This document shows positions 6,937 through 20,062 of a stretch of DNA of 64,000 nt, piece by piece. Every line of letters starts with the position of its first letter. Within the stretch, counting starts at the first letter, position 1. The notes under the pieces are model-generated. The model worked only from the letters and a program-made list of their open reading frames with translations. It was not told where the DNA came from and did not search any database. The DNA lies in sequence record OR050627.1; one strand, written 5' to 3'. The translations under genes and the position numbers were made by a program.

Positions 6937-9900
6937 ATGCTATACAAATACACAACACTCCCGGCAGATACTTCAGCGTTACCAGTAGGCGCTTTGATTC
7001 TTACAAAGAGTGGTGACGGTTACATTCTTGACAATAATAAAGTTGCGGTGCCTTTCAAAGGTAATGTACTTACTACTACGCTAATAAACAATTGGAATGA
7101 CGCTTACACTAAAGCGCATGTGCATGCTAACAAAGATACGTTGGACCTTATTAGCTTACTTTCAATTCAAAAATGGGATGAGGCTTACTCACTAAAGCAC
7201 TCGCATACTAACCTGGCAACGTTAGAAACTATAACTCCTTCTAAAATTGCTGAGTGGAACAGTGCAATGAAGTTTATAAAAACATTGTCTACTGAGGACT
7301 TAGATACTGTAATTACTAACGGAATCTATACTCAGCCATCTAATGCCAACGCGACAACAGCAAATCACTATCCAATTGGTTACGCCGGAACGTTAACAGT
7401 GCTAGGCAATGGTACTAACCACATTGTTCAGGAATATGTTAGGCTTGCGTCAGGTGCTACTGGCAACGTAAAATATCGCAGATACTACTATGTTTCATCA
7501 GGATGGTCTAACTGGCAAAAATCGTTAGATGATCGTGATATTACTCAGGCAATGATTGATTCTTGGAATCTTGCAGTGTCTTGGGGTAACCACGCATCGG
7601 CTGGATATTTAACTAGCACTACTGGTGACGCTAGGTATCTAAAACTTACTGGAGGCACATTAACTGGTGATGTTGCAGTAACTGGAGGTAAAACATTTAC
7701 ATTCACTGCTACCGATGGCAAAACTTATGAAGTTAACGGTTCAGGCACTAAGCATACTTCTGGAGCTAACGTTTTCAGCACTAACTTTATTAACGCTACA
7801 ACGTATGGGCTGACTCATGGTACTCAGCAAATGCTAACCAAGGACATTACTAACAACATACTAAAAATTGGTAATGACACTGCACCTGCACAATTAAGAT
7901 TAAAATCTGCAGTAGGTCCAAATCCTACATCAACAGTACTTACTGATAGCAATGGTGACGTTTCTATAGTTCCTGCTTTACCGCTATTTACGAACTATCT
8001 TGAACCGCAACTAATTGCTAATGCTGATAGCGCAACAACAAAAGGCATAGAGCTTAACTACTTAGACTCTACTTCACTAAACAAACCTACTACATTAGCT
8101 AACGGAACGTTAATGTCGTTGAACATAAACAGTTCAGGAGGCTCGCAATTAGCAATATCAACATCAACTGATCCTGCAGTTTATTTCAGAACTAGATCAA
8201 ACACTACATTCGGTGGATGGACTAGGTTAGCTACAACTAACGATCTTACTGCAATTGGCAATGACTATATTAGCAAAACTACTAACGACTTACCTGCTAA
8301 TTCGGCTTGGTATGTTAAGAAAGGAACTTCTGGAATTGGTGTAGTAGATACTAACTTTATTGGATTGTTTGATGCTTCTACAAAAGCTTACGTTACTGGC
8401 GGAGTGCTAAAAATTGTTAATGGGGGTGTAGAAACTAATGCATTATCTACATTTAACGGAACGACTACGTTCAACAACAACACTACTTATGTTAACGCTA
8501 GTACGTTATTTATGTTAGGCGTGCATAACGCTACGCTAGGTATGCAAGGCAACGGCAGACTTTCCGTAACGTCTGGAAGTGCTAACAAAACCGGTAGTAT
8601 AATTGTTGAAGGAGATTCACCAATTATTGCAAGACCTGAAACTATAGTTAATTCTGATACTGTACTTGCAAACTTACCTGTAGGTACTCATGGTGCAGGT
8701 ACTAGCATAGGAGGCGTTAATGCATCATTCATAACTTTTGGTAGCCCAGTTACTGGAACTAAAACAAACTTGCTTGGCTCTACTACAGGCTTCTTGAAAT
8801 TCAGATCATCGTCAGGTGCTACTTTTAACGATTGGAAGTCTTTAGTTTCTTTTGAAGACTTACAATTAGCTACTACAGAAACTTCAGTTAGCTTAACGTT
8901 CAATGGCGTAACAAAGACTGCGCCAATAACTACCGGAACGTTAACTGGCGTAATGTACACAAACAACTGGACATTACCATTTGGTACAACTAAAGGTTAT
9001 ATTGATATTGAAATGCCGACGTCTACTACCGGTGACATAGTACTTACGTTAGTAGGCTACTGGGGTAACGAACGACAATCAGGTTCTGTTAAGTATCAAA
9101 TTGGATTTGGCGCAAATACTACTCAGATTTACGATCAGTATGCAAATATAGTTTCGGTTACAGGAGGTCAAGTTTTGTTAGATAGCTATGCAGTTAATTT
9201 ATCTGCGGCTATAGTGCTAGTTAATGCTAAGCCTTGTTTACGTATTTGGTGTATGCGTGATGGCATTTCACAAACTAACACAGTTAGGGCTTTCTTACAA
9301 ATAAAAACTAGACAAGGTACTCCGTTTACATCATTGGCTGATGTTAAGCCGTTAGCTTTCGTAGCAGAGCCTAACATACCAACATTTATGGACCTTGACC
9401 AGGCGCCTAAGTCAGTTTCATTTAATCAGATTGCAGTAAGATCATCTGCGCAAAATGATGACAACGCCGCAATTAAGCTTAAAACTGCTAGAATTTCAAC
9501 ATCGCCAACAAATACAAATGGTATTCGTGTAGTAGGTACATCAAATACTGCAGCAGGTTATCTTTATTTAGGTTCAGGTAACAATAGACTAGGAGTTGAT
9601 GACGGCTCAGCAAATTCGCCTTTGCTTTATAACTCATCACCAGTAGTTACAAGAGACTATGCTATAGCAAATGGTTTTATATTTTCAGAAGGCAATGCCA
9701 GAGGTACTATAAATGGAGTTTCTGCTGAAGTAGGACTTCCTGCTAACTCATTTAAACCAGTAAAATCAGGATTCTACAGAGCTAATGGCGAAAACAACTG
9801 GGGCGCATTATCGCTAAACATTGCACACCCATCGCAATCTAATGGAGGATTTATGGCAGGTATTGCTTTTGATTATTCGGGAGCTAATGCATACTTAACG

Positions 9901-12900
9901 GGTAATGATTCGGCAGGTAACAAACTTCCTAACAAGAAAATTTTAACATCTGCAGATATCGACATATCTAAGTATTGGGAGAAATGGACCGATGGCACTA
10001 ATGTAGGATTTAATAATGTTACACCTTACTACTTCCTAGGCGCAGATGCTAACACTGCACAGAAAGTTTATACTGGCGGATTACTTGCATCAAACAGCTT
10101 CAGTGATGGTACTAAAATTCCTACTTTTGGATTATATTCAAAGGGTGACATTGCATTTGACGGCAATTTAAACAGGTTATCAGGCGAATTAAACATTCAA
10201 CGTACAGGCATTAATAAGCTTAGAACTAACGGGCCATCTACAATTTTATCTGCCGAAGCGACTAACACTACATCAGGTGCTTTTATTAGACCTTTAGGTG
10301 ATAACAATACTGCAGGGCAAACTATATTTGCTAAAGACATCGTACGTTACAACACAAAAGCTAGACAATTTAGTAGTGTATCTAACGTAACTAAATATGA
10401 AAACTTGGCAGCAGTATCGTTGGCACATAACGGCCCTAGTACAATAAAAGTTATGTTCCCTCATAGTTTGAATACTATAATGTGGAACATTAAGCTTACT
10501 GTAGTTTCATATACTGGCGCAAACAATACTAACGTTAACCAGCTGCCAATGGAACTAACAATTTCAGGTTATGGCTCGGCGCCTACAACACCGTCGACTA
10601 ATACTGGTGCTTCTGTAGTGAACGCGTTTCCTGCGTTCACTGGAGTTAAAATTGGTTTAGATGATGCTACTGGCTTTAAAACGTTAATGCTTAATTTTAG
10701 TGCGCCTTTAGCATATCCAAAAGTCATAATCGACCAAGTAATTTATCATCACTCTGGGCTAACGCCGACAATTACTGACTTAGATAATGACTATGTTATT
10801 ACACAAACTGCTGACGAAACTGGATTTACTGCACAAACTGATATTCCGTTAACGCAATTTAAAGGTTATTTTGACATTGCTAAGGCTAGCACAGCATTTC
10901 CTACTAACATAGCTAATGCTAACCAAGCATCAGCAATAAACCAGGATATGAACACATTGCCTAGCGGTAACTACGTTGGCGGTGTAAGTGTATCTGCACA
11001 AAATTTGCCGATTCCTGTAGGCACTGGCAATCCAGGAGGCTTAATATCTTTTGGTAGCGGTTCACAGACGACTAGAATTCTAGGCGCTAGTGATGGTTCT
11101 GATAATCTTTGGTTTAATTCAGGTACTTCTACAAAATGGTATCAGCTAGCTTCAAGAGATTACGTAACTACGCAATTAGCAAACTACATACCAACGTCAC
11201 AGAAAGGCGTAGCTAATGGGGTTGCTACGTTAGATGCTAATGGTACTGTACCTTCTACGCAACTGCCTTCTTACGTTGATGATGTTTTAGAATTTGCATC
11301 GTTATCGGCATTCCCAGCAGTAGGTGAATCTGGTAAAATTTATATTGCTATTGATACTAATTTACAGTATAGATGGTCTGGTTCAGTTTACGTACCTATT
11401 ATGAGTTCCGGAGGTGTAATATCCGTAAATGGTAAAACTGGCATAGTTACTTTAGATAAAACTGACATTGGTTTAGGAAATGTAGACAATACTGCAGATA
11501 ACGTAAAGAACGTACTTAGCGCCACTAAGTGGACTACGCCAAGAACATTTACGTTAAATGGTGACATTTCTGCTATAGGTACAGTTGATGGCTCGGCTAA
11601 CGTAACGTTCGCAACTACTTTGCCAAACATTGTAACTGCAGGAACTTATAAAATTACTACAGTCAATGCTAAAGGCCAAGTTACTGGAGGTTCAAATCCT
11701 ACAACTTTAGCAGGCTTTGGCATTACTGATGCTATGTCAACATCGCATCCAGCTAATGTGATTACTTCAACTGACATTGCTAACTGGAATGCTCAAGTAG
11801 CAGTAGGCAATTTTAGAACTTATGGTTTAGGAACATACAATGCACAAACTATATCTGATTTTAATACGTTACAGACGCAACTTGAAAATGTAACTAGATT
11901 CTATGGTTCAGTTAATGCTGCAGTTACTAATGGGCCTGCCGGAATTGATTATCCTGGAGGTGTTTTTAATAGTATAAGTAATGCAGTACAATCTGCATTA
12001 GTTTTTGGAGGTCATGGCAATAACAATGGTTTAGCATACAGAAACAAAACTGGTACTAATGCATGGGGTAACTGGATATACGCTTGGACAGACAAGCATT
12101 TTAGCCAAACTAACATAAACAATTGGAATGCCGCGTTTGGTTGGGGTAACCACTCAACTCAAGGCTACTTAAAGGCTGCAGATTTAACAGGATTAGTTAA
12201 GAAATCTGGCGATACTATGTCAGGTATGCTTACGATAAACTCAACATCGCAACCATTAGCACTTAAAGGCGCATCTGCAAATACTAACTACACTACTTAC
12301 ATTAAACATGATGGCAGCGGTAATATTGGATTTATTGGTTCAAATGGCGGTGGTGCTATTGGTGATGGCGGAACTGGTGACCGATTTGTAATTCGCGGAA
12401 CTGCAGGTCTTGATCTTTATAATGATGCTGGTGCAATTACTGCTAATGGTGGCGCAATTTGGAGCACTATGCATTTTTCAAGCACTGATTTAGAAAGTTT
12501 CTTTGAAGCTTATAATAACAGCATTTCAGGCGGAACTATGACACCTACACAGCTACAGCTTACAAGAACAGGGTCCACTCCAATTAACATTGCTATACCG
12601 ACGTTCAACCAAAATACTACAGGCAATGCAGGTTCTGCAACTAAATTGCAAACTGCAAGGACTATAAAAATTGGTGAGCAATCAGGAGCTTTTGATGGTA
12701 CTGGAAACTTAACTTTCGGTCACAACGAAATGAAAGTTACTATGTGCGGTGTTAAGACATATGGCGAATCTTGGAACTCAGTAGTAGTGCTAGATACTAG
12801 AAATGCCAGCCCATTACCATCGACAGATTTACAATCAGCAGTTACATTTGACTTTAAGCAGTCATCTGCAATTGGACTAAATAGCATTCCTGGAGTTTCT

Positions 12901-14058
12901 ACATATGCAAGTGCTATTACTATGGCGCCATTCGTTAACGACTCCGGTAATAATAATTCTGCATTTACACTAGCTCAATCTAATGGTGTTTTAGCATTTA
13001 AAAATTATGTTAATGGCGCATGGGGTTCATGGATTAAATTGTTAACATCTGCAGATATTTCTACAGCGTCAATTAACAACTGGAACCAGGCATATTCTTG
13101 GGGTAACCATGCAAATGCAGGCTATATGTCCAAGTCTACGCAGATGGGAATATTAAGTTTTAACAGTTTATCTGGAACTGGTGCTAACGGAATTTATCGT
13201 TCTGATGCTGACCCAACTACAGCAAATGGCGTTAAGAACAAGTATTCGCCAATGTTGCATATGGGCGCTTCTGATACAATGACGCAATTGTCCATAGCTT
13301 ACCAAACTGGTGAACTTTCATTCAGAGGAGGCTACAATAATAGCTGGCAAGATTGGCGTACTGCTTGGGATAACGTTAATTTACCTCAGCCAGTAACAAG
13401 AAACACTGCACAAACTATTACGGCAGATAAAACTCACACAGAGAACATTTTGCTTAATGGTAACAACATGATTAAGTTTTTTGGTACTGCGTCAACAAGA
13501 GTAATGATACTATCTGCTGATAGAATTACTGGTTGGACTGGTATCTCTGATGACCAAGATCGTAAAGTTGCAGGTATTGACTATGGTTCAGGTAACTATA
13601 CGTTAGGTGAAATGATCTATGTTAGGAAGACTAACAATGGCACTGGTAATGTAGGTATTAGATCAACTCCGCATGCAACATATCCAGTTTACTTAAATGG
13701 TGACACTGCATGTACTGGTAACTTCATTGGTGTAGGATTCTATGAGTCTTCACGTAGGGCACTGAAAACTAACATTAAAGCTTTTGAGAAATCAGGACTT
13801 GACTTAGTTAATGAACTTGACATTGTAACGTTTGACCGTAAGGACAACGAGGAAATTAAAGATAAAATCGGAGTTATCATAGATGACACACCATCCGAAT
13901 TTGCTTCAATTTCAGGTGATGAGGTTGACTTATACAAAACAACCTTCATTCAAGCCAAGGCTATTCAGGAACTTTCTGCAACTGTTGAGAAGCAATCTGC
14001 CGAAATTGAAGAGCTAAAGAAAATGGTAAATATATTACTAAAAGGTACGAATGGATAA
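6937..14058 (+). CDS. Long tail fibre / receptor-binding protein with multiple knob modules and C-terminal peptidase S74 intramolecular chaperone
   Basis: 2373 aa, G/T/N/S-rich; pyocin-knob-like modules ending in W-x-x-W; HxH motifs; three WGNH repeats; C-terminal YESSRRALKTNI...IGVI...KAIQEL plus coiled coil. Confidence 0.9.
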   Translation: MLYKYTTLPADTSALPVGALILTKSGDGYILDNNKVAVPFKGNVLTTTLINNWNDAYTKAHVHANKDTLDLISLLSIQKWDEAYSLKHSHTNLATLETITPSKIAEWNSAMKFIKTLSTEDLDTVITNGIYTQPSNANATTANHYPIGYAGTLTVLGNGTNHIVQEYVRLASGATGNVKYRRYYYVSSGWSNWQKSLDDRDITQAMIDSWNLAVSWGNHASAGYLTSTTGDARYLKLTGGTLTGDVAVTGGKTFTFTATDGKTYEVNGSGTKHTSGANVFSTNFINATTYGLTHGTQQMLTKDITNNILKIGNDTAPAQLRLKSAVGPNPTSTVLTDSNGDVSIVPALPLFTNYLEPQLIANADSATTKGIELNYLDSTSLNKPTTLANGTLMSLNINSSGGSQLAISTSTDPAVYFRTRSNTTFGGWTRLATTNDLTAIGNDYISKTTNDLPANSAWYVKKGTSGIGVVDTNFIGLFDASTKAYVTGGVLKIVNGGVETNALSTFNGTTTFNNNTTYVNASTLFMLGVHNATLGMQGNGRLSVTSGSANKTGSIIVEGDSPIIARPETIVNSDTVLANLPVGTHGAGTSIGGVNASFITFGSPVTGTKTNLLGSTTGFLKFRSSSGATFNDWKSLVSFEDLQLATTETSVSLTFNGVTKTAPITTGTLTGVMYTNNWTLPFGTTKGYIDIEMPTSTTGDIVLTLVGYWGNERQSGSVKYQIGFGANTTQIYDQYANIVSVTGGQVLLDSYAVNLSAAIVLVNAKPCLRIWCMRDGISQTNTVRAFLQIKTRQGTPFTSLADVKPLAFVAEPNIPTFMDLDQAPKSVSFNQIAVRSSAQNDDNAAIKLKTARISTSPTNTNGIRVVGTSNTAAGYLYLGSGNNRLGVDDGSANSPLLYNSSPVVTRDYAIANGFIFSEGNARGTINGVSAEVGLPANSFKPVKSGFYRANGENNWGALSLNIAHPSQSNGGFMAGIAFDYSGANAYLTGNDSAGNKLPNKKILTSADIDISKYWEKWTDGTNVGFNNVTPYYFLGADANTAQKVYTGGLLASNSFSDGTKIPTFGLYSKGDIAFDGNLNRLSGELNIQRTGINKLRTNGPSTILSAEATNTTSGAFIRPLGDNNTAGQTIFAKDIVRYNTKARQFSSVSNVTKYENLAAVSLAHNGPSTIKVMFPHSLNTIMWNIKLTVVSYTGANNTNVNQLPMELTISGYGSAPTTPSTNTGASVVNAFPAFTGVKIGLDDATGFKTLMLNFSAPLAYPKVIIDQVIYHHSGLTPTITDLDNDYVITQTADETGFTAQTDIPLTQFKGYFDIAKASTAFPTNIANANQASAINQDMNTLPSGNYVGGVSVSAQNLPIPVGTGNPGGLISFGSGSQTTRILGASDGSDNLWFNSGTSTKWYQLASRDYVTTQLANYIPTSQKGVANGVATLDANGTVPSTQLPSYVDDVLEFASLSAFPAVGESGKIYIAIDTNLQYRWSGSVYVPIMSSGGVISVNGKTGIVTLDKTDIGLGNVDNTADNVKNVLSATKWTTPRTFTLNGDISAIGTVDGSANVTFATTLPNIVTAGTYKITTVNAKGQVTGGSNPTTLAGFGITDAMSTSHPANVITSTDIANWNAQVAVGNFRTYGLGTYNAQTISDFNTLQTQLENVTRFYGSVNAAVTNGPAGIDYPGGVFNSISNAVQSALVFGGHGNNNGLAYRNKTGTNAWGNWIYAWTDKHFSQTNINNWNAAFGWGNHSTQGYLKAADLTGLVKKSGDTMSGMLTINSTSQPLALKGASANTNYTTYIKHDGSGNIGFIGSNGGGAIGDGGTGDRFVIRGTAGLDLYNDAGAITANGGAIWSTMHFSSTDLESFFEAYNNSISGGTMTPTQLQLTRTGSTPINIAIPTFNQNTTGNAGSATKLQTARTIKIGEQSGAFDGTGNLTFGHNEMKVTMCGVKTYGESWNSVVVLDTRNASPLPSTDLQSAVTFDFKQSSAIGLNSIPGVSTYASAITMAPFVNDSGNNNSAFTLAQSNGVLAFKNYVNGAWGSWIKLLTSADISTASINNWNQAYSWGNHANAGYMSKSTQMGILSFNSLSGTGANGIYRSDADPTTANGVKNKYSPMLHMGASDTMTQLSIAYQTGELSFRGGYNNSWQDWRTAWDNVNLPQPVTRNTAQTITADKTHTENILLNGNNMIKFFGTASTRVMILSADRITGWTGISDDQDRKVAGIDYGSGNYTLGEMIYVRKTNNGTGNVGIRSTPHATYPVYLNGDTACTGNFIGVGFYESSRRALKTNIKAFEKSGLDLVNELDIVTFDRKDNEEIKDKIGVIIDDTPSEFASISGDEVDLYKTTFIQAKAIQELSATVEKQSAEIEELKKMVNILLKGTNG

Positions 14059-14964: not shown

Positions 14965-15330
14965 ATGAAAAATATTGAATTAACAAAGGAAAATGCGTTA
15001 GTATCGAAAGTGGTCGAGATAGCTGAATACAACAATTTCAGTGCGTTTCTTGTTGGTTCACAGCTTGACGACAGTAAACAATCAAAGGATATAAATATCA
15101 TAGGCGTTATGGAAAACCAAGACTTTATTGATAAGTTCGGCTTTCCATACACCGAAATATTCAGGCGTTTAATGCAATCAGACTATTCTGACTTGCGTAC
15201 AATACGTTACATAAGCATAAGTAACCGAATTAAAATTGAATTGCGATTTACTACAGCAATGAACGTTACTTTTATTCTAATGGATGTCGAAAGCTTTGAC
15301 TACGACTTACCTTACAAACAAATACACTAA
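14965..15330 (+). CDS. Hypothetical protein
   Basis: Tightly packed 121-aa ORF. Confidence 0.65.
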   Translation: MKNIELTKENALVSKVVEIAEYNNFSAFLVGSQLDDSKQSKDINIIGVMENQDFIDKFGFPYTEIFRRLMQSDYSDLRTIRYISISNRIKIELRFTTAMNVTFILMDVESFDYDLPYKQIH

Positions 15331-15341
15331 ACAAAACAAAA

Positions 15342-16448
15342 ATGAGCATAAAATACGGCTTAAATCAATTTAAAAATACTGCAGACAATAGTACTGAAGT
15401 AGTCATTGACAATGGTTTACTTTATGAAATTGGCATACCAATTGGCGAAGTTAACGAAGCTACAAACAACATTTACGTAACTGATGCTTCTGGCAAAAAG
15501 ATAAGAGTGCCTATACATGATGCAATAATTCAGTCAATTCAGCTAATGTCTGATGACGTTAAAAGCCAATTTAAGTCTAGCGTTTTTGGCGAAATAGACT
15601 TATTGCCAGCATCAATTTCAGGAGCTATGCCATTCATGCTAACTTCGGCAGATTTTGGCAAGTCGATAGACGTCATAATTTACGGCAAAAATATGAATAT
15701 GCACGACACTGCAAATACTAAAGTTGCGTTAGTCGACAAAAATTCAGGTGCCGAGATAGTAGCGACTACTTGGAATACATTGAACGTCAACCAAATGCAG
15801 GCCACTTTTAAAATCCCTGCTAAATGCAAAGCTACTGCGTTTTTAGTTGCAGTGACTTATGGTGACATCGCAGCACAATCTACTGCAGAAATTATCGTTA
15901 ACACTTCGGTAACTTTTGAACCTGTAGAGCTTAACTTTACAAAATTTGGTGAAGAATATTGCATAGCAACTACACCAAAATCTATAACATTTTCGCCACT
16001 TTTTAACAACAATATTGGTGCAGATTCAGTGTCAGTTACTTCCGAAGCTATCGACTGTACAAAGAATTTTGTTTTGTCGGCAGACTTGGCAATAAATACT
16101 AAATCCGGAGCTTCACTTAACGCTATTGACTTGACTAGGTCAGGCTTTGGTTTAGGCTTTGCAGGACAGCCTGGAGAAGTTAGGTTTGACGGCGTTAACA
16201 TGGACTTACGTGACTTTAAGCCAAGGTTCAACACATTCCTAACTAAGGAACCTATAAAGCATGTAAAATTCATAAAGCAAGGTAACTCAATTTATAAGCT
16301 GCTATATTCAGATAATAGCGTGTATACATTCAAAACTATACTTAGTATAGATGATGACATAGCCATATGCGCATCTATGCAAAGACTTGATGATAGCGGA
16401 AGTATCATTAATGTATCATACAACAATATAACTTTAAAAACATTCTAA
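15342..16448 (+). CDS. Putative structural protein (Ig/IPT-like plus beta-sandwich)
   Basis: V-I-I-Y-G-K-N-M Ig/IPT-like segment, beta-rich C-terminus; N-terminus resembles the fibre N-termini. Confidence 0.55.
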   Translation: MSIKYGLNQFKNTADNSTEVVIDNGLLYEIGIPIGEVNEATNNIYVTDASGKKIRVPIHDAIIQSIQLMSDDVKSQFKSSVFGEIDLLPASISGAMPFMLTSADFGKSIDVIIYGKNMNMHDTANTKVALVDKNSGAEIVATTWNTLNVNQMQATFKIPAKCKATAFLVAVTYGDIAAQSTAEIIVNTSVTFEPVELNFTKFGEEYCIATTPKSITFSPLFNNNIGADSVSVTSEAIDCTKNFVLSADLAINTKSGASLNAIDLTRSGFGLGFAGQPGEVRFDGVNMDLRDFKPRFNTFLTKEPIKHVKFIKQGNSIYKLLYSDNSVYTFKTILSIDDDIAICASMQRLDDSGSIINVSYNNITLKTF

Positions 16449-16450
16449 AA

Positions 16451-16873
16451 ATGGCAAATTTCTTAATTGCATACAAAAAGACAGGAGGCTTTGAAGGCGG
16501 CTGGAACCACATAAAAGGAGATACTGGAGGAGAAACATATTGCGGAATTGCAAGAAACTATTGGCCTAAATGGGCTGGCTGGGCAATCATAGATTCTAAA
16601 AAGCCAATTAAAACAGGTACAATTTTTAAAGACAACGCTAAACTTGAAGATTTAGTGCATGCGTTTTACAAAACTAATTTCTGGGACGTTGTCGGTGGAG
16701 ATGACATCGAGGACCAAACTATAGCTAACACGCTTTATGATTTTGGGGTTAACGCCGGAACGTCAAGATCAGTTAAGCAAATTCAGGGCGCTTTAGGCTT
16801 AGCACAAACTGGTAAAGTAGACAAAGCTTTAGTTGAAGCTATCAACAATCCATCCAAAAACTTACTTAAATAA
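16451..16873 (+). CDS. Endolysin, glycoside hydrolase family 108 catalytic part (lacks C-terminal PG_binding_3 segment)
   Basis: FEGGW, DTGGETYCGI, FY..NFW, YDFGVNAG motifs of GH108; stops at 140 aa after ...ALVEAINN. Confidence 0.9.
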   Translation: MANFLIAYKKTGGFEGGWNHIKGDTGGETYCGIARNYWPKWAGWAIIDSKKPIKTGTIFKDNAKLEDLVHAFYKTNFWDVVGGDDIEDQTIANTLYDFGVNAGTSRSVKQIQGALGLAQTGKVDKALVEAINNPSKNLLK

Positions 16874-16877
16874 CAAA

Positions 16878-17546
16878 ATGAAGAACATATTTTTTAGTAT
16901 GATGTTAGGGCTTTTTGCTTTAACATCATGCAACAACAAAAATGCTAGTAACGTTAAGAATGACGTTGACTCATTAACACTAGTAGACACTGCGTTTATC
17001 GTAGTAGACTCAGCAACTAGAGATTCAGTTCCAATTTACATCGAACAGGAAGCTTACGACAATAAAGCACAGATTGCTAAAGAAGAGTTTAGCAGACTTA
17101 AAAAATCGGCCGACTCACTTTACAATATTACGTTATCACTTAAGCATCTGGAAGGTCAGTATGCCAATATAATCGCAACAGGCAAAGCAGACTACAAAAG
17201 CTTAGACGCTAAAAAGATTAAGTTAGCACAATATAAAGCTAAACTTAAAGCTAACTTAGAACGTAAAATTGTTAAAAAGTCATTTGACGATGAAGTCATA
17301 GCTTCACCAATATTTACTGAGGCAGACTCTGCAAAAGACAAATTTGTAGTATATCTTGGTGTTATAGAAAAAATTGAGACTGAGATCATACCTACATTAA
17401 AAGAACAAGAACTTGACATTAGTCGATCTACATTGCATAAAAAGTTAGTAGTTGCAAATGCACAATATTACTTAAACATCACATTACGTAATCCAAGCCA
17501 GGACAAATTCTTGAAAGGTTGGACACGAAGAGCCTGGTCTCAGTAA
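16878..17546 (+). CDS. Lipoprotein carrying the GH108-type C-terminal PG_binding_3 motif
   Basis: ATG 16878 MKNIFFSMMLGLFALTSC (lipobox Cys18), helical stalk, ends QYYLNITLRNPSQDKFLKGWTRRA. Confidence 0.8.
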   Translation: MKNIFFSMMLGLFALTSCNNKNASNVKNDVDSLTLVDTAFIVVDSATRDSVPIYIEQEAYDNKAQIAKEEFSRLKKSADSLYNITLSLKHLEGQYANIIATGKADYKSLDAKKIKLAQYKAKLKANLERKIVKKSFDDEVIASPIFTEADSAKDKFVVYLGVIEKIETEIIPTLKEQELDISRSTLHKKLVVANAQYYLNITLRNPSQDKFLKGWTRRAWSQ

Positions 17547-17549
17547 CAA

Positions 17550-17557
17550 TATAAATA
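17550..17557 (+). promoter_or_regulatory. Possible T4-type late promoter TATAAATA
   Basis: Exact TATAAATA 37 nt upstream of the PAS gene; another exact copy at 37707, near-copies at 4983 and 5412; could arise by chance in AT-rich DNA. Confidence 0.35.
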
Positions 17558-17593
17558 CTAAAATTTAAAAAACAAAATCCAGAATAAAACCAA

Positions 17594-18208
17594 ATGACTA
17601 TGTCTATACTACAAGACTACAGCGTAGTTATAGGAAGCATTCTAGTTATTGTCGCTACATTTTTGAAAAAAGGTAATGTTCAACAACTAAACCAGTATAT
17701 TAACACAATTAATATGCTGAGAGTTGACTTATTAGCACTCAAAAAGGACAATGCAGATATTGCATCCGACATACGTAAGTTACAGGCCGAATTGCACGAC
17801 AAGGATCGTTTGGTTGCATTATTGGAAGCGACTTCTTGGGACTTACCGTTTCCTTATTGGCTTAAGGACATGCAACATAACATGGTGTACATTAATGCTA
17901 AATATGAAAAAACGTTTAACGTTAGGTCCATTGATTATGTTGGCAAAAAAGATAGCGACATCTGGCCTGTAGAAATTGCCGAAAAGTTCAAAGCTAATGA
18001 CCAAAAGATGATTGACGGTGACGACGAGTTTATAATTTCACAAACAGAAGTTGACGGCTTTGTAGTCATAAAATGGAAACGTTGGGCTGGTAGCATTTTA
18101 ATTGGCGTTGCAGGAATGTGTATACCAATTAATGTATTTCATAATTTTACGCAAGATGTCTTAAACGTAGTTAATCAGAATAACAGCAATGAGCGAACAC
18201 GAAACTAA
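17594..18208 (+). CDS. Membrane-anchored coiled-coil plus PAS-domain protein (holin/lysis-regulator candidate)
   Basis: N-terminal TM (YSVVIGSILVIVATF), coiled coil, then LPFPYWLKD...YINAKYE...VGKKDSDIWP...F.AND..M PAS_4-like fold. Confidence 0.75.
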   Translation: MTMSILQDYSVVIGSILVIVATFLKKGNVQQLNQYINTINMLRVDLLALKKDNADIASDIRKLQAELHDKDRLVALLEATSWDLPFPYWLKDMQHNMVYINAKYEKTFNVRSIDYVGKKDSDIWPVEIAEKFKANDQKMIDGDDEFIISQTEVDGFVVIKWKRWAGSILIGVAGMCIPINVFHNFTQDVLNVVNQNNSNERTRN

Positions 18209-18587
18209 CACAGAATATACAATGCCGCAAGAGGAAACTACAGCAGGCGGCATCTTAAACAACATGGAGCTTGCTCAAAAAAATCCTAGTTTATGGCTTT
18301 GGATTGGAATTATAATAGCAATAGTAGCCATTTTTGGCTATTTTACAAGGTCGCAAGAGCTTAGAATCGATGAGGTTAAGGCTGAACGTGATACTTGGAA
18401 GAGTAAATTTGAGGAAGTGTCTAAAGCTTACAATGAATTATTGATGAGTCGATACTACGGAAACGTTACTACTATGCCAGGAGTTCCTCAAGTTCCTCAT
18501 GATTCAGTTGGCAAATTCCAAAACCAGGATGCAATAAGACCAAAAGAACTAGAAGACAAAACAAAAACAAATACTGACAATGATTAA
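18189..18587 (+). CDS. Single-TM membrane protein with coiled coil (holin/antiholin or spanin-associated candidate)
   Basis: TM LWLWIGIIIAIVAIFGYF followed by a coiled coil; overlaps both neighbours. Confidence 0.65.
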   Translation: MSEHETNTEYTMPQEETTAGGILNNMELAQKNPSLWLWIGIIIAIVAIFGYFTRSQELRIDEVKAERDTWKSKFEEVSKAYNELLMSRYYGNVTTMPGVPQVPHDSVGKFQNQDAIRPKELEDKTKTNTDND

Positions 18588-19212
18588 AACAATTAAAAGC
18601 GCTATAGTTATTACAACAATTGCGCTTTTTGCGTTTGGATGCGGTGCACGTAAAGTCGATCTTTCAAAACATAAGGAAGTTGAAACTACTGAATATGCCA
18701 AAGAAAACGTAAAGCAAACAGAAAGTAACGTACAGACTAACGTTACGCAGAGCGAAAAGAACGTAACTACTAAGCAAACAGAAGCTACGAAGAGCGAAAA
18801 GGCTGATAATACTGAGCTAAACATAACAATTGAACCTTCAGGAAAAGGTGAAGTTGCTGAGTATGAATTTGTATTTGGTGACAAAGTTTTCAAAGGCAAA
18901 ACGTCAGGTAAGCTAATAGTTTCCAACAAAACTGGAACTAACGTTAAGGACGAAAAGAACGTTAGTAACGAAAATGCTAACAACGAAAAGAACGCTAGCG
19001 ACAATAGCGTAAGTAACGTAAAAGCTTCAGAAGCAAACAAAGAGTCTGGCTCTAGCGAAAATAAAGTAGAAGACAAAACTAAAAACACTGACAAAAAGGA
19101 ACCGTTTATTTTCAATTTCATGTCAGGCCTAGCCATTGTAGCAGGTGTTGCTATACTAGGATTCCTTGTCTACTTAGTATTACTTAGATTTGGATTGATT
19201 AAAAGAACATAG
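18580..19212 (+). CDS. Unimolecular spanin (u-spanin) candidate
   Basis: N-terminal lipobox LFAFGC, polar T/N/K/E/S-rich linker, C-terminal TM plus basic tail; lies in the lysis module. Confidence 0.75.
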   Translation: MIKTIKSAIVITTIALFAFGCGARKVDLSKHKEVETTEYAKENVKQTESNVQTNVTQSEKNVTTKQTEATKSEKADNTELNITIEPSGKGEVAEYEFVFGDKVFKGKTSGKLIVSNKTGTNVKDEKNVSNENANNEKNASDNSVSNVKASEANKESGSSENKVEDKTKNTDKKEPFIFNFMSGLAIVAGVAILGFLVYLVLLRFGLIKRT

Positions 19213-19277
19213 TATAAATTAAAGTAAATATGCGGTCATATATGTATAATAAATTCACAATATAAAACAAATATATT

Positions 19278-19793
19278 ATGAGCAATACATTAGCCTTACC
19301 GGATAGCAAGCGGTTTGCAGACAACAAAATCATTCATTCATTATTCCGTAACTATATCGGAATATATCATTACAGTGGCCCTTCGCCAAAATCTCCAGAT
19401 GCTAAACAAACTAAAAAGTTTAGTGAACATGGCTATCAAATGGTAAACAGAGAGGACGGCAAACCTTCACATTTTTACATTTTTGACCCTACAGATGATC
19501 CTAATAATTATTTCAGACTGCAGATAATTTGGGCCTTTGATACAATTAATCGCATACTTAAACATTATGACCTGTCAGTAACTTTTGAATTTATTGACGT
19601 AGACTTTTGGCAATTCTTTTATTCTGAGTTTTTGAATAAACCTGCAGCTGAATCTAAACGATATAAATTTGTGGAAGGTTTAAGAGGTTTTGCATCGCAA
19701 ACACGAGGATTAGCATCTTACGGTTATACAATTAATGATGTTTTAGCTTTTGAAAAAGTACAATTATCAAAATACAGACTTAATAAAAGATAA
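19278..19793 (+). CDS. Hypothetical protein
   Basis: 171-aa ORF with A-rich leader. Confidence 0.7.
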   Translation: MSNTLALPDSKRFADNKIIHSLFRNYIGIYHYSGPSPKSPDAKQTKKFSEHGYQMVNREDGKPSHFYIFDPTDDPNNYFRLQIIWAFDTINRILKHYDLSVTFEFIDVDFWQFFYSEFLNKPAAESKRYKFVEGLRGFASQTRGLASYGYTINDVLAFEKVQLSKYRLNKR

Positions 19794-19890
19794 CCGGCCC
19801 CGCTAAGCGTTGATTTGGAATTATGCCTTATCTGTAATACGCCTTAGCCGAGCAATCTTGGCAGGTAGGTACCACTGGGCCAAGCGTTAT
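19794..19890 (+). ncRNA. Candidate structured RNA element
   Basis: GC-richer non-coding island with nested complementary segments (GGCCC/GGGCC, GCTAAG/CTTAGC, CTTGGC with GCCGAG or GCCAAG). Confidence 0.3.
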
Positions 19891-19895
19891 TTATA

Positions 19896-19926
19896 AGCCT
19901 AGCACTCAAAAAGTGCTAGGCTTTTT
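19896..19926 (+). terminator. Rho-independent terminator
   Basis: AAGCCTAGCACT-caaaa-AGTGCTAGGCTT plus T run. Confidence 0.85.
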
Positions 19927-19945
19927 GCGTTAAAAATGTTGAAAA

Positions 19946-19991
19946 TAGTTGCATAAAAATTTTCAGATGTCAAATAATTGTTATATATTTG
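19946..19991 (+). promoter_or_regulatory. Conserved phage promoter
   Basis: TAGTTG 19946, ATGTC 19967, TATATTTG 19984. Confidence 0.75.
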
Positions 19992-20062
19992 TATTATAAA
20001 ATTAAGGTAATAACATACAATTGATAAAATCATAAACAACTAATTTTTAAAACATTCATAAA

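What the first reader, a model, noticed from the sequence alone, without database searches (positions are those of the whole stretch)
16451..17546. Split GH108 endolysin: catalytic half and PG-binding tail on separate genes, the tail carried by a lipoprotein
Seen: ORF 16451-16873 has the GH108 catalytic motifs (FEGGW, DxGGETxxGI, FDFGVNAG) but stops at ...ALVEAINNPSKNLLK. The next gene (ATG 16878) starts with a lipoprotein signal (LFALTSC), runs about 170 aa of helical stalk, and ends in QYYLNITLRNPSQDKFLKGWTRR. Known: GH108 lysozymes are normally one chain, and the C-terminal PG_binding_3 segment 'YY..l...p.q.kFl.GW.nR' follows directly at the point where ORF1 stops. Inference: a lipoprotein cassette has been inserted in the endolysin, giving a two-part enzyme. 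The signal-less catalytic half may become active only after holin release, when it meets the membrane-tethered tail in the periplasm. That would be an unusual built-in lysis safety lock, or a way to aim the muramidase at the envelope.
Basis: partly seen in the sequence, partly recalled or inferred. Interest (0 to 1): 0.88.

Follow-up and report, generated by a model that had tools for sequence, protein, structure and literature searches.

The report
Phage lysozyme split across two genes
This Chryseobacterium jumbo phage, many other Bacteroidota phages and the prototype crAssphage encode their GH108 cell-wall lysozyme as two proteins, a cytoplasmic catalytic chain and a separately exported, usually lipid-anchored protein carrying the last two helices of the substrate cleft, so the enzyme can probably form only in the periplasm.

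Summary
The window is Chryseobacterium phage MA9V-1. ORF1 (16451-16873, 140 aa) is a GH108 muramidase fragment with its catalytic Glu/Asp/Thr but without the last two helices. ORF2 (16878-17546, 222 aa) has a lipoprotein signal, a mostly helical stalk, and a tail scoring as the second half of PG_binding_3. One endolysin profile maps ORF1 to positions 333-448 and the ORF2 tail to 450-484.

It is not an artefact or a one-off. Of 46 distinct short-GH108 loci with enough flank, 44 carry an exported tail gene, usually with a 4-nt start/stop overlap. In crAssphage the tail gene lies upstream with another gene between. Both genes are under strong purifying selection.

By alignment to solved SagA and TtsA structures, the tail carries groove residues that contact peptidoglycan (Gln208, Phe211, Trp215). 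It is therefore part of the active-site cleft, not only a binding tag.

Best reading (about 0.6) is a compartment-split endolysin that reassembles in the periplasm after holin release. Reassembly is inferred, not shown. The main rival is that ORF1 works alone and ORF2 is a separate envelope-acting lysis protein. I found no published description. I rate it a new variant of a known kind.

The parts
16451..16873 (+). ORF1 (MA9V1_191), 140 aa. It is the signal-less catalytic chain of a GH108 muramidase, covering helices alpha1-alpha7 and stopping at the alpha7/alpha8 boundary.
   Evidence: Pfam PF05838, profile 4-85 of 85, E 1.7e-17. PHROG 315 positions 333-448. Aligns to residues 15-122 of SagA chain 7dnp_A. 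No hydrophobic segment. dN/dS 0.06 against MA9V-2.
16493..16537 (+). Catalytic triad stretch: Glu15, Asp24 and Thr29.
   Evidence: The alignment to 7dnp_A puts E15, D24 and T29 opposite SagA Glu17, Asp26 and Thr31. Their roles are taken from PMC8334348. E15, D24 and T29 are invariant across 97 relatives.
16808..16831 (+). Residues 120-127 (TGKVDKAL). This is where one-piece enzymes carry the DG.iG..T diaminopimelate pocket, and it is altered here.
   Evidence: Column counts: Asp 98%, Gly 95% and Thr 90% in one-piece forms, against Thr 84% and Leu 95% in split forms. Pocket residues come from SagA and TtsA. One split lineage, L141, keeps the motif.
16874..16877 (.). Four-base spacer between ORF1's stop and ORF2's start. 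Most relatives have a 4-nt overlap instead.
   Evidence: Of the 43 tail genes found downstream of the catalytic gene, 31 overlap its stop by 4 nt.
16878..17546 (+). ORF2 (MA9V1_192), 222 aa. It is an exported lipoprotein that carries the missing end of the enzyme.
   Evidence: dN/dS 0.035 against MA9V-2, the lowest of eight neighbouring genes.
16878..16931 (+). Signal peptide with lipobox L-T-S-C; Cys18 is the predicted lipidated residue.
   Evidence: Read from the sequence. The same kind of N-terminus occurs in relatives P0001-P0006 and in most surveyed loci. No dedicated signal-peptide predictor was available.
16932..17423 (+). Stalk, residues 19-182. It is variable and mostly helical, with about 100 residues more than the 124-aa prophage versions.
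   Evidence: Alignment A5. Low-confidence AF2 secondary structure. No Pfam or PDB match.
17424..17543 (+). Tail, residues 183-222. It corresponds to helices alpha8-alpha9 of the GH108 C-terminal lobe, with groove residues Gln208, Phe211 and Trp215.
   Evidence: Pfam PF09374 positions 40-75 of 76, 27.0 bits. PHROG 315 positions 450-484. Aligned with one-piece tails. SagA Phe151/Trp155 and TtsA N166/F169 contact peptidoglycan. 16 nucleotide differences but no amino-acid difference against MA9V-2.
17600..18208 (+). Neighbour MA9V1_193: a membrane protein with a PAS-like fold. It may be a lysis-cassette member; its role is unknown.
   Evidence: Two hydrophobic segments. Pfam PAS_4, E 1.6e-6. Annotated start taken.
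18189..18587 (+). Neighbour MA9V1_194: 132 aa with one transmembrane segment. It is a holin candidate by architecture only.
   Evidence: Its ends overlap both flanking genes.
18580..19212 (+). Neighbour MA9V1_195: 210 aa with an N-terminal lipobox (F-G-C, Cys21) and a C-terminal transmembrane segment. This is the architecture of a unimolecular spanin.
   Evidence: Similar genes lie downstream of the pair in L068, L138 and crAssphage L168. No family hit.

Best explanation
ORF1 and ORF2 are the two halves of one GH108 muramidase, the phage's endolysin, encoded as separate polypeptides that go to different compartments.

ORF1 has no signal and stays in the cytoplasm. It carries the catalytic Glu15/Asp24/Thr29 and helices alpha1-alpha7. 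ORF2 is exported by the Sec/lipoprotein pathway and sits on a membrane facing the periplasm. Its last 40 residues are helices alpha8-alpha9, which in the one-piece enzyme complete the C-terminal helix bundle and form one wall of the substrate groove.

When a holin opens the inner membrane, ORF1 reaches the periplasm. The tail docks onto it and a complete, membrane-tethered muramidase forms and cuts the wall.

Shown here: the homology of both pieces, the exact break point, the export signal, the conservation of the pair, and the purifying selection. Inferred: docking, the dependence of activity on docking, and the order of events.
For: 1. The two pieces are contiguous on one endolysin profile and on one-piece relatives.
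2. The missing part matters for function. In SagA the groove is lined by the start of alpha9; Phe151 and Trp155 bind MurNAc and alpha8 leucines touch the stem peptide. The profile-to-7dnp alignment places Phe151/Trp155 on the FLKGW motif, which is ORF2 Phe211/Trp215. In TtsA, N166D abolishes function, and N166 and F169 crosslink to peptidoglycan; these correspond to ORF2 Gln208 and Phe211.
3. The residues invariant in one-piece tails (Gln, Phe, Trp, Arg) stay conserved, as Gln/Asn, Phe/Tyr, Trp and Arg, in all three tail flavours of the split family, while the rest of ORF2 is unalignable.
4. The pair is conserved. 44 of 46 distinct short-form loci have an exported tail gene within 4 kb, and 31 of the 43 downstream ones overlap the catalytic gene's stop by 4 nt. 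A profile of the tail protein finds 327 clusters at 50% identity, and the top 150 are all 48-222 aa with the match at their C-terminal end.
5. dN/dS is 0.06 for ORF1 and 0.035 for ORF2. The tail has 16 silent differences and no amino-acid change.
6. Hydrophobicity along alpha5-alpha7 is unchanged between split and one-piece forms (r 0.83, mean shift -0.04). The surface that alpha8-alpha9 would cover has therefore not become polar.
7. AF2 of a natural in-frame fusion (P0044) gives pLDDT about 96 for the catalytic part, below 50 for the embedded signal and linker, 75-95 for the tail, and pTM 0.77. Foldseek alignments to SagA and NMB1012 that include the tail score higher, with target-normalised TM 0.61-0.66, than those covering the N-terminal part only, 0.53.
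8. Context: the pair sits after the tail-fibre genes and before membrane proteins and a spanin-like gene.
Against: There is no direct evidence that the two proteins bind or that ORF1 needs ORF2. The fusion model used an alignment containing one-piece enzymes, so it tests compatibility with the fold, not complex formation.

Two related Chitinophagaceae loci (L022, L024) have a short GH108 and no tail gene within 4 kb, so a truncated enzyme may work alone.

The diaminopimelate-pocket motif is lost in most split forms, although its Asp is essential in TtsA. This shows the C-terminal lobe has changed in ways I cannot explain.

No advantage of splitting is evident, because a cytoplasmic endolysin is harmless anyway. 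The phage also has an 822-aa 'lysozyme RrrD' protein that its authors took as the lysin.

The membrane that ORF2 is sorted to is unknown.
Confidence: 0.6

Rival explanations
1. ORF1 is a self-sufficient, shortened endolysin. ORF2 is an independent envelope-acting lysis protein, spanin-like or outer-membrane-disrupting, that merely inherited the cationic, aromatic end of the old endolysin and uses it on the membrane or wall without docking to ORF1.
For: ORF2 lies where spanin genes usually lie and is a lipoprotein. Its tail is rich in Lys, Arg, Trp and Phe. Two loci have a short GH108 with no tail gene. One relative's signal peptide weakly hits an Rz-like spanin family. From my own knowledge, C-terminal amphipathic regions of some Gram-negative lysins act on membranes; a paper title seen (PMC8972805) points the same way.
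Against: The residues kept are the specific groove residues of the one-piece enzyme (Gln/Asn, Phe/Tyr, Gly, Trp, Arg), not just charge and amphipathicity. ORF1 lacks two helices of a five-helix bundle and shows no re-polarised surface. ORF2 has no C-terminal transmembrane segment and no spanin family hit. A separate gene with unimolecular-spanin architecture sits downstream here and in other loci.
Confidence: 0.22
2. ORF2 binds ORF1 but acts as a regulator or retention device. It holds or limits the muramidase at the membrane, affecting timing or confinement to the lysing cell, rather than being needed for catalysis.
For: It has the same docking-compatible features as the best explanation. Brucella SagA is itself thought to be confined by a membrane anchor. 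The stalk length varies widely, from 74 to 222 aa, as expected of a tether.
Against: The tail carries residues that touch the substrate in SagA and TtsA, so docking should complete the groove rather than block it. 14 of the 43 downstream tail proteins lack a clear lipobox and may be soluble.
Confidence: 0.1
3. The split is not real at the protein level. It is an assembly error or a recent pseudogene, or a single chain is restored by an intron, a frameshift or readthrough.
For: One metagenomic contig (L007, P0044) encodes the two parts in one frame.
Against: The same split occurs in two independently isolated phages that are 87.5% identical in DNA and in 44 further distinct loci. Selection on both genes is strong. 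No Rfam intron is found in 15000-20000. The frame offset between the two genes differs between this phage (4-nt spacer) and most relatives (4-nt overlap). One or two other genes lie between the parts in L009/L010, crAssphage and cr110_1, and in the crAss-type order the tail gene comes first.
Confidence: 0.02
4. The pair is not a lysis module. ORF2 would be, for example, a superinfection-exclusion lipoprotein or a virion-associated factor, and ORF1 an entry enzyme.
For: The pair follows the tail-fibre genes. One relative's signal peptide weakly hits a Cor exclusion family. The phage's authors assigned lysis to another gene.
Against: The best family match is endolysin. Holin-like, membrane and spanin-like genes are neighbours here and in relatives, including a Phage_holin_4_1 hit next to the pair in L007. 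The weak hits cover only the signal peptides.
Confidence: 0.04

Closest known systems
One-piece GH108 / PG_binding_3 muramidases (phage endolysins; Brucella SagA, PDB 7DNP; Salmonella TtsA, 6V40; Neisseria NMB1012, 2IKB)
   Same: Same fold and catalytic triad. They share the groove residues Gln/Asn, Phe and Trp. ORF1 and the ORF2 tail together cover the whole profile.
   Different: Those are single chains of about 165-195 aa. Here the chain is cut at the alpha7/alpha8 boundary and the second piece has its own export signal. Most split forms have also lost the diaminopimelate-pocket motif.
crAssphage (Carjivirus communis) gp80 'putative lysozyme' and gp82 'putative membrane protein, contains peptidoglycan-binding domain'
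   Same: Same split family. gp80 is a 142-aa GH108 fragment (PF05838, profile 4-85 of 85). gp82 is a 116-aa protein with a hydrophobic N-terminus, a lipobox and a PG_binding_3 tail (profile 28-75 of 76).
   Different: The gene order is reversed, with the tail gene first and a 65-aa gene between, and the stalk is short. The public annotation names the two genes separately and does not link them.
PlyC of streptococcal phage C1, a multimeric endolysin from two genes
   Same: A phage lysin built from products of two separate genes (my own knowledge; papers seen, e.g. PMC10604209).
   Different: The PlyC subunits are complete, independently folded domains, one catalytic and one wall-binding, made in one compartment of a Gram-positive host. 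Here a single domain is cut in two and the halves are sent to different compartments.
'Two-component' endolysins from one gene with an internal start (e.g. LysIME-EF1, PMC7098653)
   Same: An extra polypeptide carrying the C-terminal part joins the full-length enzyme.
   Different: In those cases the catalytic chain is already complete and the extra chains are additional copies of a whole binding domain. No export signal is involved.
SAR (signal-anchor-release) endolysins
   Same: Endolysin activity is controlled by membrane topology and compartment (my own knowledge of the P1 Lyz / R21 class).
   Different: SAR enzymes are single chains, exported and held inactive in the membrane by their own N-terminus. 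ORF1 has no hydrophobic N-terminus, and here it is the non-catalytic piece that is exported.
Spanins (the Rz/Rz1 pair; unimolecular spanins such as T1 gp11)
   Same: ORF2 is a lipoprotein gene beside the endolysin gene, often overlapping its neighbour.
   Different: ORF2 has no C-terminal transmembrane segment, no spanin family hit and no embedded partner gene. A separate spanin-like gene lies at 18580-19212.

Membership tests
GH108 muramidase (Pfam PF05838) | Profile match above the curated cut-off | tested here: met
   ORF1 scores 64.2 bits against a cut-off of 21.2, covering profile 4-85 of 85.
GH108 muramidase (Pfam PF05838) | Catalytic Glu/Asp/Thr triad and the hydrophobic-Asn motif | tested here: met
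   E15, D24, T29 and N101 align with SagA Glu17, Asp26, Thr31 and His92 (roles from PMC8334348).
GH108 muramidase (Pfam PF05838) | Complete two-lobed fold, including alpha8-alpha9, in one chain | tested here: not met
   ORF1 ends opposite residue 122-133 of chains that are 167-195 aa long. The rest is found in ORF2.
GH108 muramidase (Pfam PF05838) | Muramidase activity | not testable with these tools
PG_binding_3 (Pfam PF09374) | Profile match above the cut-off over the whole domain | tested here: inconclusive
   The ORF2 tail scores 27.0 bits against a cut-off of 24.6 but covers only positions 40-75 of 76. The first half lies in ORF1, where only a weak PG_binding_1 match appears (19.1 bits, below the cut-off of 23).
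PG_binding_3 (Pfam PF09374) | Diaminopimelate pocket (Asp and Thr of the DG.iG..T motif) | tested here: not met
   ORF1 has TGKVDKAL at this site. In split forms the columns are Thr 84% and Leu 95%, against Asp 98% and Thr 90% in one-piece forms.
Bacterial lipoprotein (signal peptidase II substrate) | Basic N-terminus, hydrophobic core and a lipobox ending in Cys | tested here: met
   ORF2 has M-K-N, then a hydrophobic run, then L15-T16-S17-C18. 29 of the 43 downstream relatives have a similar lipobox. This is a pattern test only; no dedicated predictor was used and lipidation cannot be tested.
Unimolecular spanin | N-terminal lipobox plus a C-terminal transmembrane segment | tested here: not met
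   ORF2 has no hydrophobic segment outside its signal peptide. The neighbour at 18580-19212 does meet this feature.
Two-component spanin (outer-membrane subunit) | Small lipoprotein with a partner inner-membrane subunit gene, and a family match | tested here: not met
   ORF2 has no PHROG spanin hit and no embedded or overlapping partner. Its best hit is endolysin.
SAR endolysin | Weakly hydrophobic N-terminal signal-anchor on the catalytic chain | tested here: not met
   ORF1 has no hydrophobic segment.
Intron- or frameshift-interrupted endolysin gene | A self-splicing intron or a conserved frameshift geometry that restores one chain | tested here: not met
   No Rfam family is found in 15000-20000. 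The frame offset and gene order vary between relatives, and other genes can lie between the two parts.
PlyC-type multimeric endolysin | Separate genes, each encoding a complete, independently folding subunit | tested here: not met
   The break falls inside one helix bundle. ORF2 modelled alone is low confidence (pLDDT 45), though its alignment was shallow.

The most novel reading that the evidence does not exclude
A natural compartment-split enzyme. The active-site groove of the endolysin exists only after a cytoplasmic catalytic fragment, released by the holin, meets a Sec-exported, membrane-anchored fragment in the periplasm. Wall degradation would then need two independent export events. 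The arrangement is ancient and widespread in Bacteroidota phages, including the prototype crAssphage.
Probability: 0.5. Interest if true: 0.85.

Novelty: new variant of a known kind. Interest (0 to 1): 0.78.

Why it matters
Endolysins are textbook single-chain enzymes or, rarely, assemblies of complete domains. A lysin whose catalytic groove is divided between a cytoplasmic chain and an exported chain would be a new way of controlling or localising lysis.

It would also be a natural case of protein-fragment complementation across a membrane. Because the family includes crAssphage and many Bacteroidota prophages, it bears on how major gut and environmental phages lyse their hosts, which is poorly understood.

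There is a practical consequence for annotation and for mining lysins. The 135-142-aa 'GH108 lysozymes' of these phages are probably incomplete on their own, and the small 'hypothetical' or 'peptidoglycan-binding' lipoproteins beside them belong to the same enzyme.

Tried and rejected
- Assembly artefact or pseudogene: rejected. Two phage isolates and 44 further loci share the split, and selection on both genes is strong.
- Intron: no Rfam match.
- Programmed frameshift or readthrough: rejected. The frame offset and gene order are not conserved, and genes intervene in L009/L010, crAssphage and cr110_1.
- ORF2 as a spanin: no C-terminal transmembrane segment and no family hit; a separate spanin-like gene exists.
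- ORF2 against solved structures by sequence: only chance-level hits.
- ORF2 modelled alone: pLDDT 45, too poor for a fold search.
- Sigma-70 promoter and terminator scan: no more sites than in shuffled sequence, and Bacteroidota promoters are not covered by the tool.
- My first motif rescan of the apparent exceptions used a wrong pattern. It was redone, which moved L141 from 'no tail' to 'tail gene upstream'.
- A Helicobacter prophage record with the GH108 gene annotated in two short pieces looks like decay, not this arrangement.
- Escherichia phage hits that seemed to span two features are ordinary one-piece endolysins.
- Literature searches found no description of this split. The library does not hold most subscription journals, so absence is not proof.
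Full report
**Identity of the window.** The region is 100% identical to Chryseobacterium phage MA9V-1 (OR050627.1, 213.5 kb). Window base 16451 is record base 165958. The sister phage MA9V-2 is 87.5% identical over 15300-18300. Both genes are 'hypothetical' in MA9V-1. In MA9V-2 only the first is named, as a GH108 family protein. The two phage papers do not discuss the pair and assign lysis to an 822-aa 'lysozyme RrrD' gene outside this window.

**The observation.** ORF1 (16451-16873, 140 aa) matches Pfam Glyco_hydro_108 over the whole profile (E 1.7e-17). ORF2 (16878-17546, 222 aa) begins with a lipoprotein signal (lipobox L15-T16-S17-C18). Its residues 184-219 match the second half of PG_binding_3, above the curated cut-off. 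On the PHROG endolysin profile 315, ORF1 covers positions 333-448 and the ORF2 tail covers 450-484. One-piece relatives run straight through the break point. The window has one fragment of each kind, and so does the whole phage record.

**Not a one-off.**
- The closest ORF2 relatives are MA9V-2 (95%), a 222-aa protein on a metagenomic contig (40%), and 124-aa lipoproteins of Chryseobacterium prophages. Each lies directly after a 137-139-aa GH108 gene.
- About 70 clusters of 132-152-aa GH108 proteins are closer to ORF1 than any one-piece (about 180 aa) form.
- I fetched 160 loci from genome and viral collections and classified them.
- There are 50 distinct short-form loci, of which 46 have enough flank to judge. 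44 of these carry a gene for a small protein (74-222 aa) whose C-terminus is the missing tail.
- In 43 of the 44 the tail gene lies downstream. Among these, 31 overlap the catalytic gene's stop by 4 nt, 42 have a hydrophobic N-terminus and 29 have a lipobox. The rest have ordinary signal peptides ending in Gln.
- In L141 the tail gene lies upstream.
- Only two related Chitinophagaceae loci (L022, L024) lack a tail gene within 4 kb.
- A profile of the tail protein finds 327 clusters at 50% identity. The best 150 are all 48-222 aa, with the match at their C-terminal end.
- All genome hits with the split are Bacteroidota: Chryseobacterium, Flavobacteriales, Paludibacter, Prolixibacteraceae, and unclassified Bacteroidia and Bacteroidetes bins.

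**crAssphage.** The prototype crAssphage has the same split in another order. gp82 is annotated 'putative membrane protein, contains peptidoglycan-binding domain'. It has a hydrophobic N-terminus, a lipobox, and a PG_binding_3 match at positions 28-75 of 76. It is followed by a 65-aa gene and then by gp80, a 142-aa 'putative lysozyme' matching GH108 at 4-85 of 85. A related crAss-like phage has two small genes between the parts.

**What the missing piece is.**
- The SagA structure paper (PMC8334348) describes an N-terminal catalytic lobe and a five-helix C-terminal lobe (alpha5-alpha9).
- The substrate groove lies between the lobes, lined by the alpha1-alpha2 loop and the start of alpha9.
- Phe151 and Trp155 of alpha9 bind the MurNAc acetyl group, and alpha8 leucines touch the stem peptide.
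- A profile of one-piece relatives aligns to chain 7dnp_A so that Phe151 and Trp155 fall on the F-x-x-x-W motif. In ORF2 this motif is Phe211...Trp215.
- In TtsA (PMC6996933), N166D abolishes function, and N166 and F169 crosslink to peptidoglycan. By the same alignment these are ORF2 Gln208 and Phe211.
- ORF1 keeps Glu15, Asp24, Thr29 and Asn101, the counterparts of SagA Glu17, Asp26, Thr31 and His92.
- So the catalytic residues are on one chain and one wall of the groove is on the other.

**Evidence that both chains are in use.**
- Between the two phages, dN/dS is 0.06 for ORF1 and 0.035 for ORF2. The 42-residue tail has 16 nucleotide differences and no amino-acid change.
- Across the family the stalk is unalignable, but the tail keeps the residues that are invariant in one-piece enzymes.
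- The hydrophobicity profile of alpha5-alpha7 is the same in split and one-piece forms (r 0.83, mean shift -0.04).

**Structure models.**
- One contig encodes a natural in-frame fusion, P0044. It was modelled as it stands, with an alignment of short and one-piece relatives.
- The catalytic part has pLDDT about 96. The embedded signal and linker are below 50. The tail is 75-95. pTM is 0.77.
- Foldseek's best match is SagA. Alignments that include the tail have higher target-normalised TM-scores (0.61-0.66) than alignments of the N-terminal part alone (0.53).
- This shows compatibility with the ancestral fold, not binding, because the alignment contained one-piece enzymes.
- ORF2 modelled alone is low confidence.

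**Evolution.**
- In a neighbour-joining tree of the catalytic part, the downstream-tail forms make one contiguous group nested among one-piece forms. The fusion P0044 lies inside that group.
- L141 is 45% identical to crAssphage gp80 and, like it, has the tail gene upstream. It branches elsewhere in the tree. There may therefore have been one split followed by rearrangement, or two splits.
- Most split forms have replaced the diaminopimelate-pocket motif (Asp 98%, Gly 95%, Thr 90% in one-piece forms) by Thr-Gly-x-Ile-x-x-x-Leu. L141 keeps the motif. I cannot explain this change.

**Mechanism.** The best-supported reading is a compartment-split endolysin. ORF1 waits in the cytoplasm and ORF2 is exported and anchored. 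After the holin opens the membrane, the tail completes ORF1's helix bundle and groove. The neighbouring genes fit a lysis cassette: a one-transmembrane protein, a membrane protein with a PAS-like fold, and a gene with unimolecular-spanin architecture. Docking, dependence of activity on docking, and the benefit of the arrangement are all inferred. The rival readings are given with their weights in the Rival explanations section.

**Novelty.** Eight literature searches and the papers opened from them found two-gene or two-chain endolysins only in Gram-positive systems (PlyC; internal-start isoforms). Nothing described a GH108 enzyme divided between a cytoplasmic and an exported chain. The crAssphage annotation notes a peptidoglycan-binding domain in gp82 but does not connect it to gp80. 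I rate this a new variant of a known kind.

Noticed in passing
L168 946-1929 (Carjivirus communis BK010471.1, gp82-gp80); L170 (cr110_1): The prototype crAssphage and a related crAss-like phage carry the same split GH108. Here the tail lipoprotein gene lies upstream of the catalytic gene, with one or two small genes between. The public annotation does not link the two genes.
   Followed up: partly
window 18580-19212: A 210-aa protein has an N-terminal lipobox (Cys21) and a C-terminal transmembrane segment, the architecture of a unimolecular spanin. It hits no family. Similar genes follow the pair in L068, L138 and crAssphage.
   Followed up: partly
window 17600-18208: A membrane protein with two hydrophobic segments and a PAS-like fold (Pfam PAS_4, E 1.6e-6) sits inside the putative lysis cluster. 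It is annotated 'regulatory protein' in MA9V-2. A sensor domain among lysis genes is unusual.
   Followed up: no
window 16808-16831 and alignment columns: Most split-form GH108 chains have lost the DG.iG..T diaminopimelate-pocket motif, whose Asp is essential in TtsA. One split lineage, L141, keeps it. The meaning for substrate recognition is unknown.
   Followed up: partly
L007 1469-2194 (protein P0044): One metagenomic contig encodes the catalytic part and the tail protein as a single 241-aa reading frame, with the signal peptide embedded in the middle. It is seen in one sample only and could be a rare variant or an assembly error.
   Followed up: partly
L022 and L024 (Chitinophagaceae / Hanamia genomes): These loci have short GH108 genes with no detectable tail gene within 4 kb on either side. 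They are the only exceptions among 46 loci.
   Followed up: partly
L009/L089 and L010/L091, between the two genes: A conserved 65-66-aa gene of unknown function lies between the catalytic gene and the tail gene. crAssphage also has a 65-aa gene between its two parts.
   Followed up: no
window 6937-14058: A 2373-aa fibre-like protein ends in a Peptidase_S74 intramolecular chaperone domain (E 1.8e-6). This suggests a self-cleaving tail fibre or spike just upstream of the lysis genes.
   Followed up: partly
L171 (Helicobacter cinaedi prophage BK070092.1): The GH108 gene is annotated as two short pieces in this record but as one gene in sister records. It looks like gene decay, not the split described here.
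   Followed up: no
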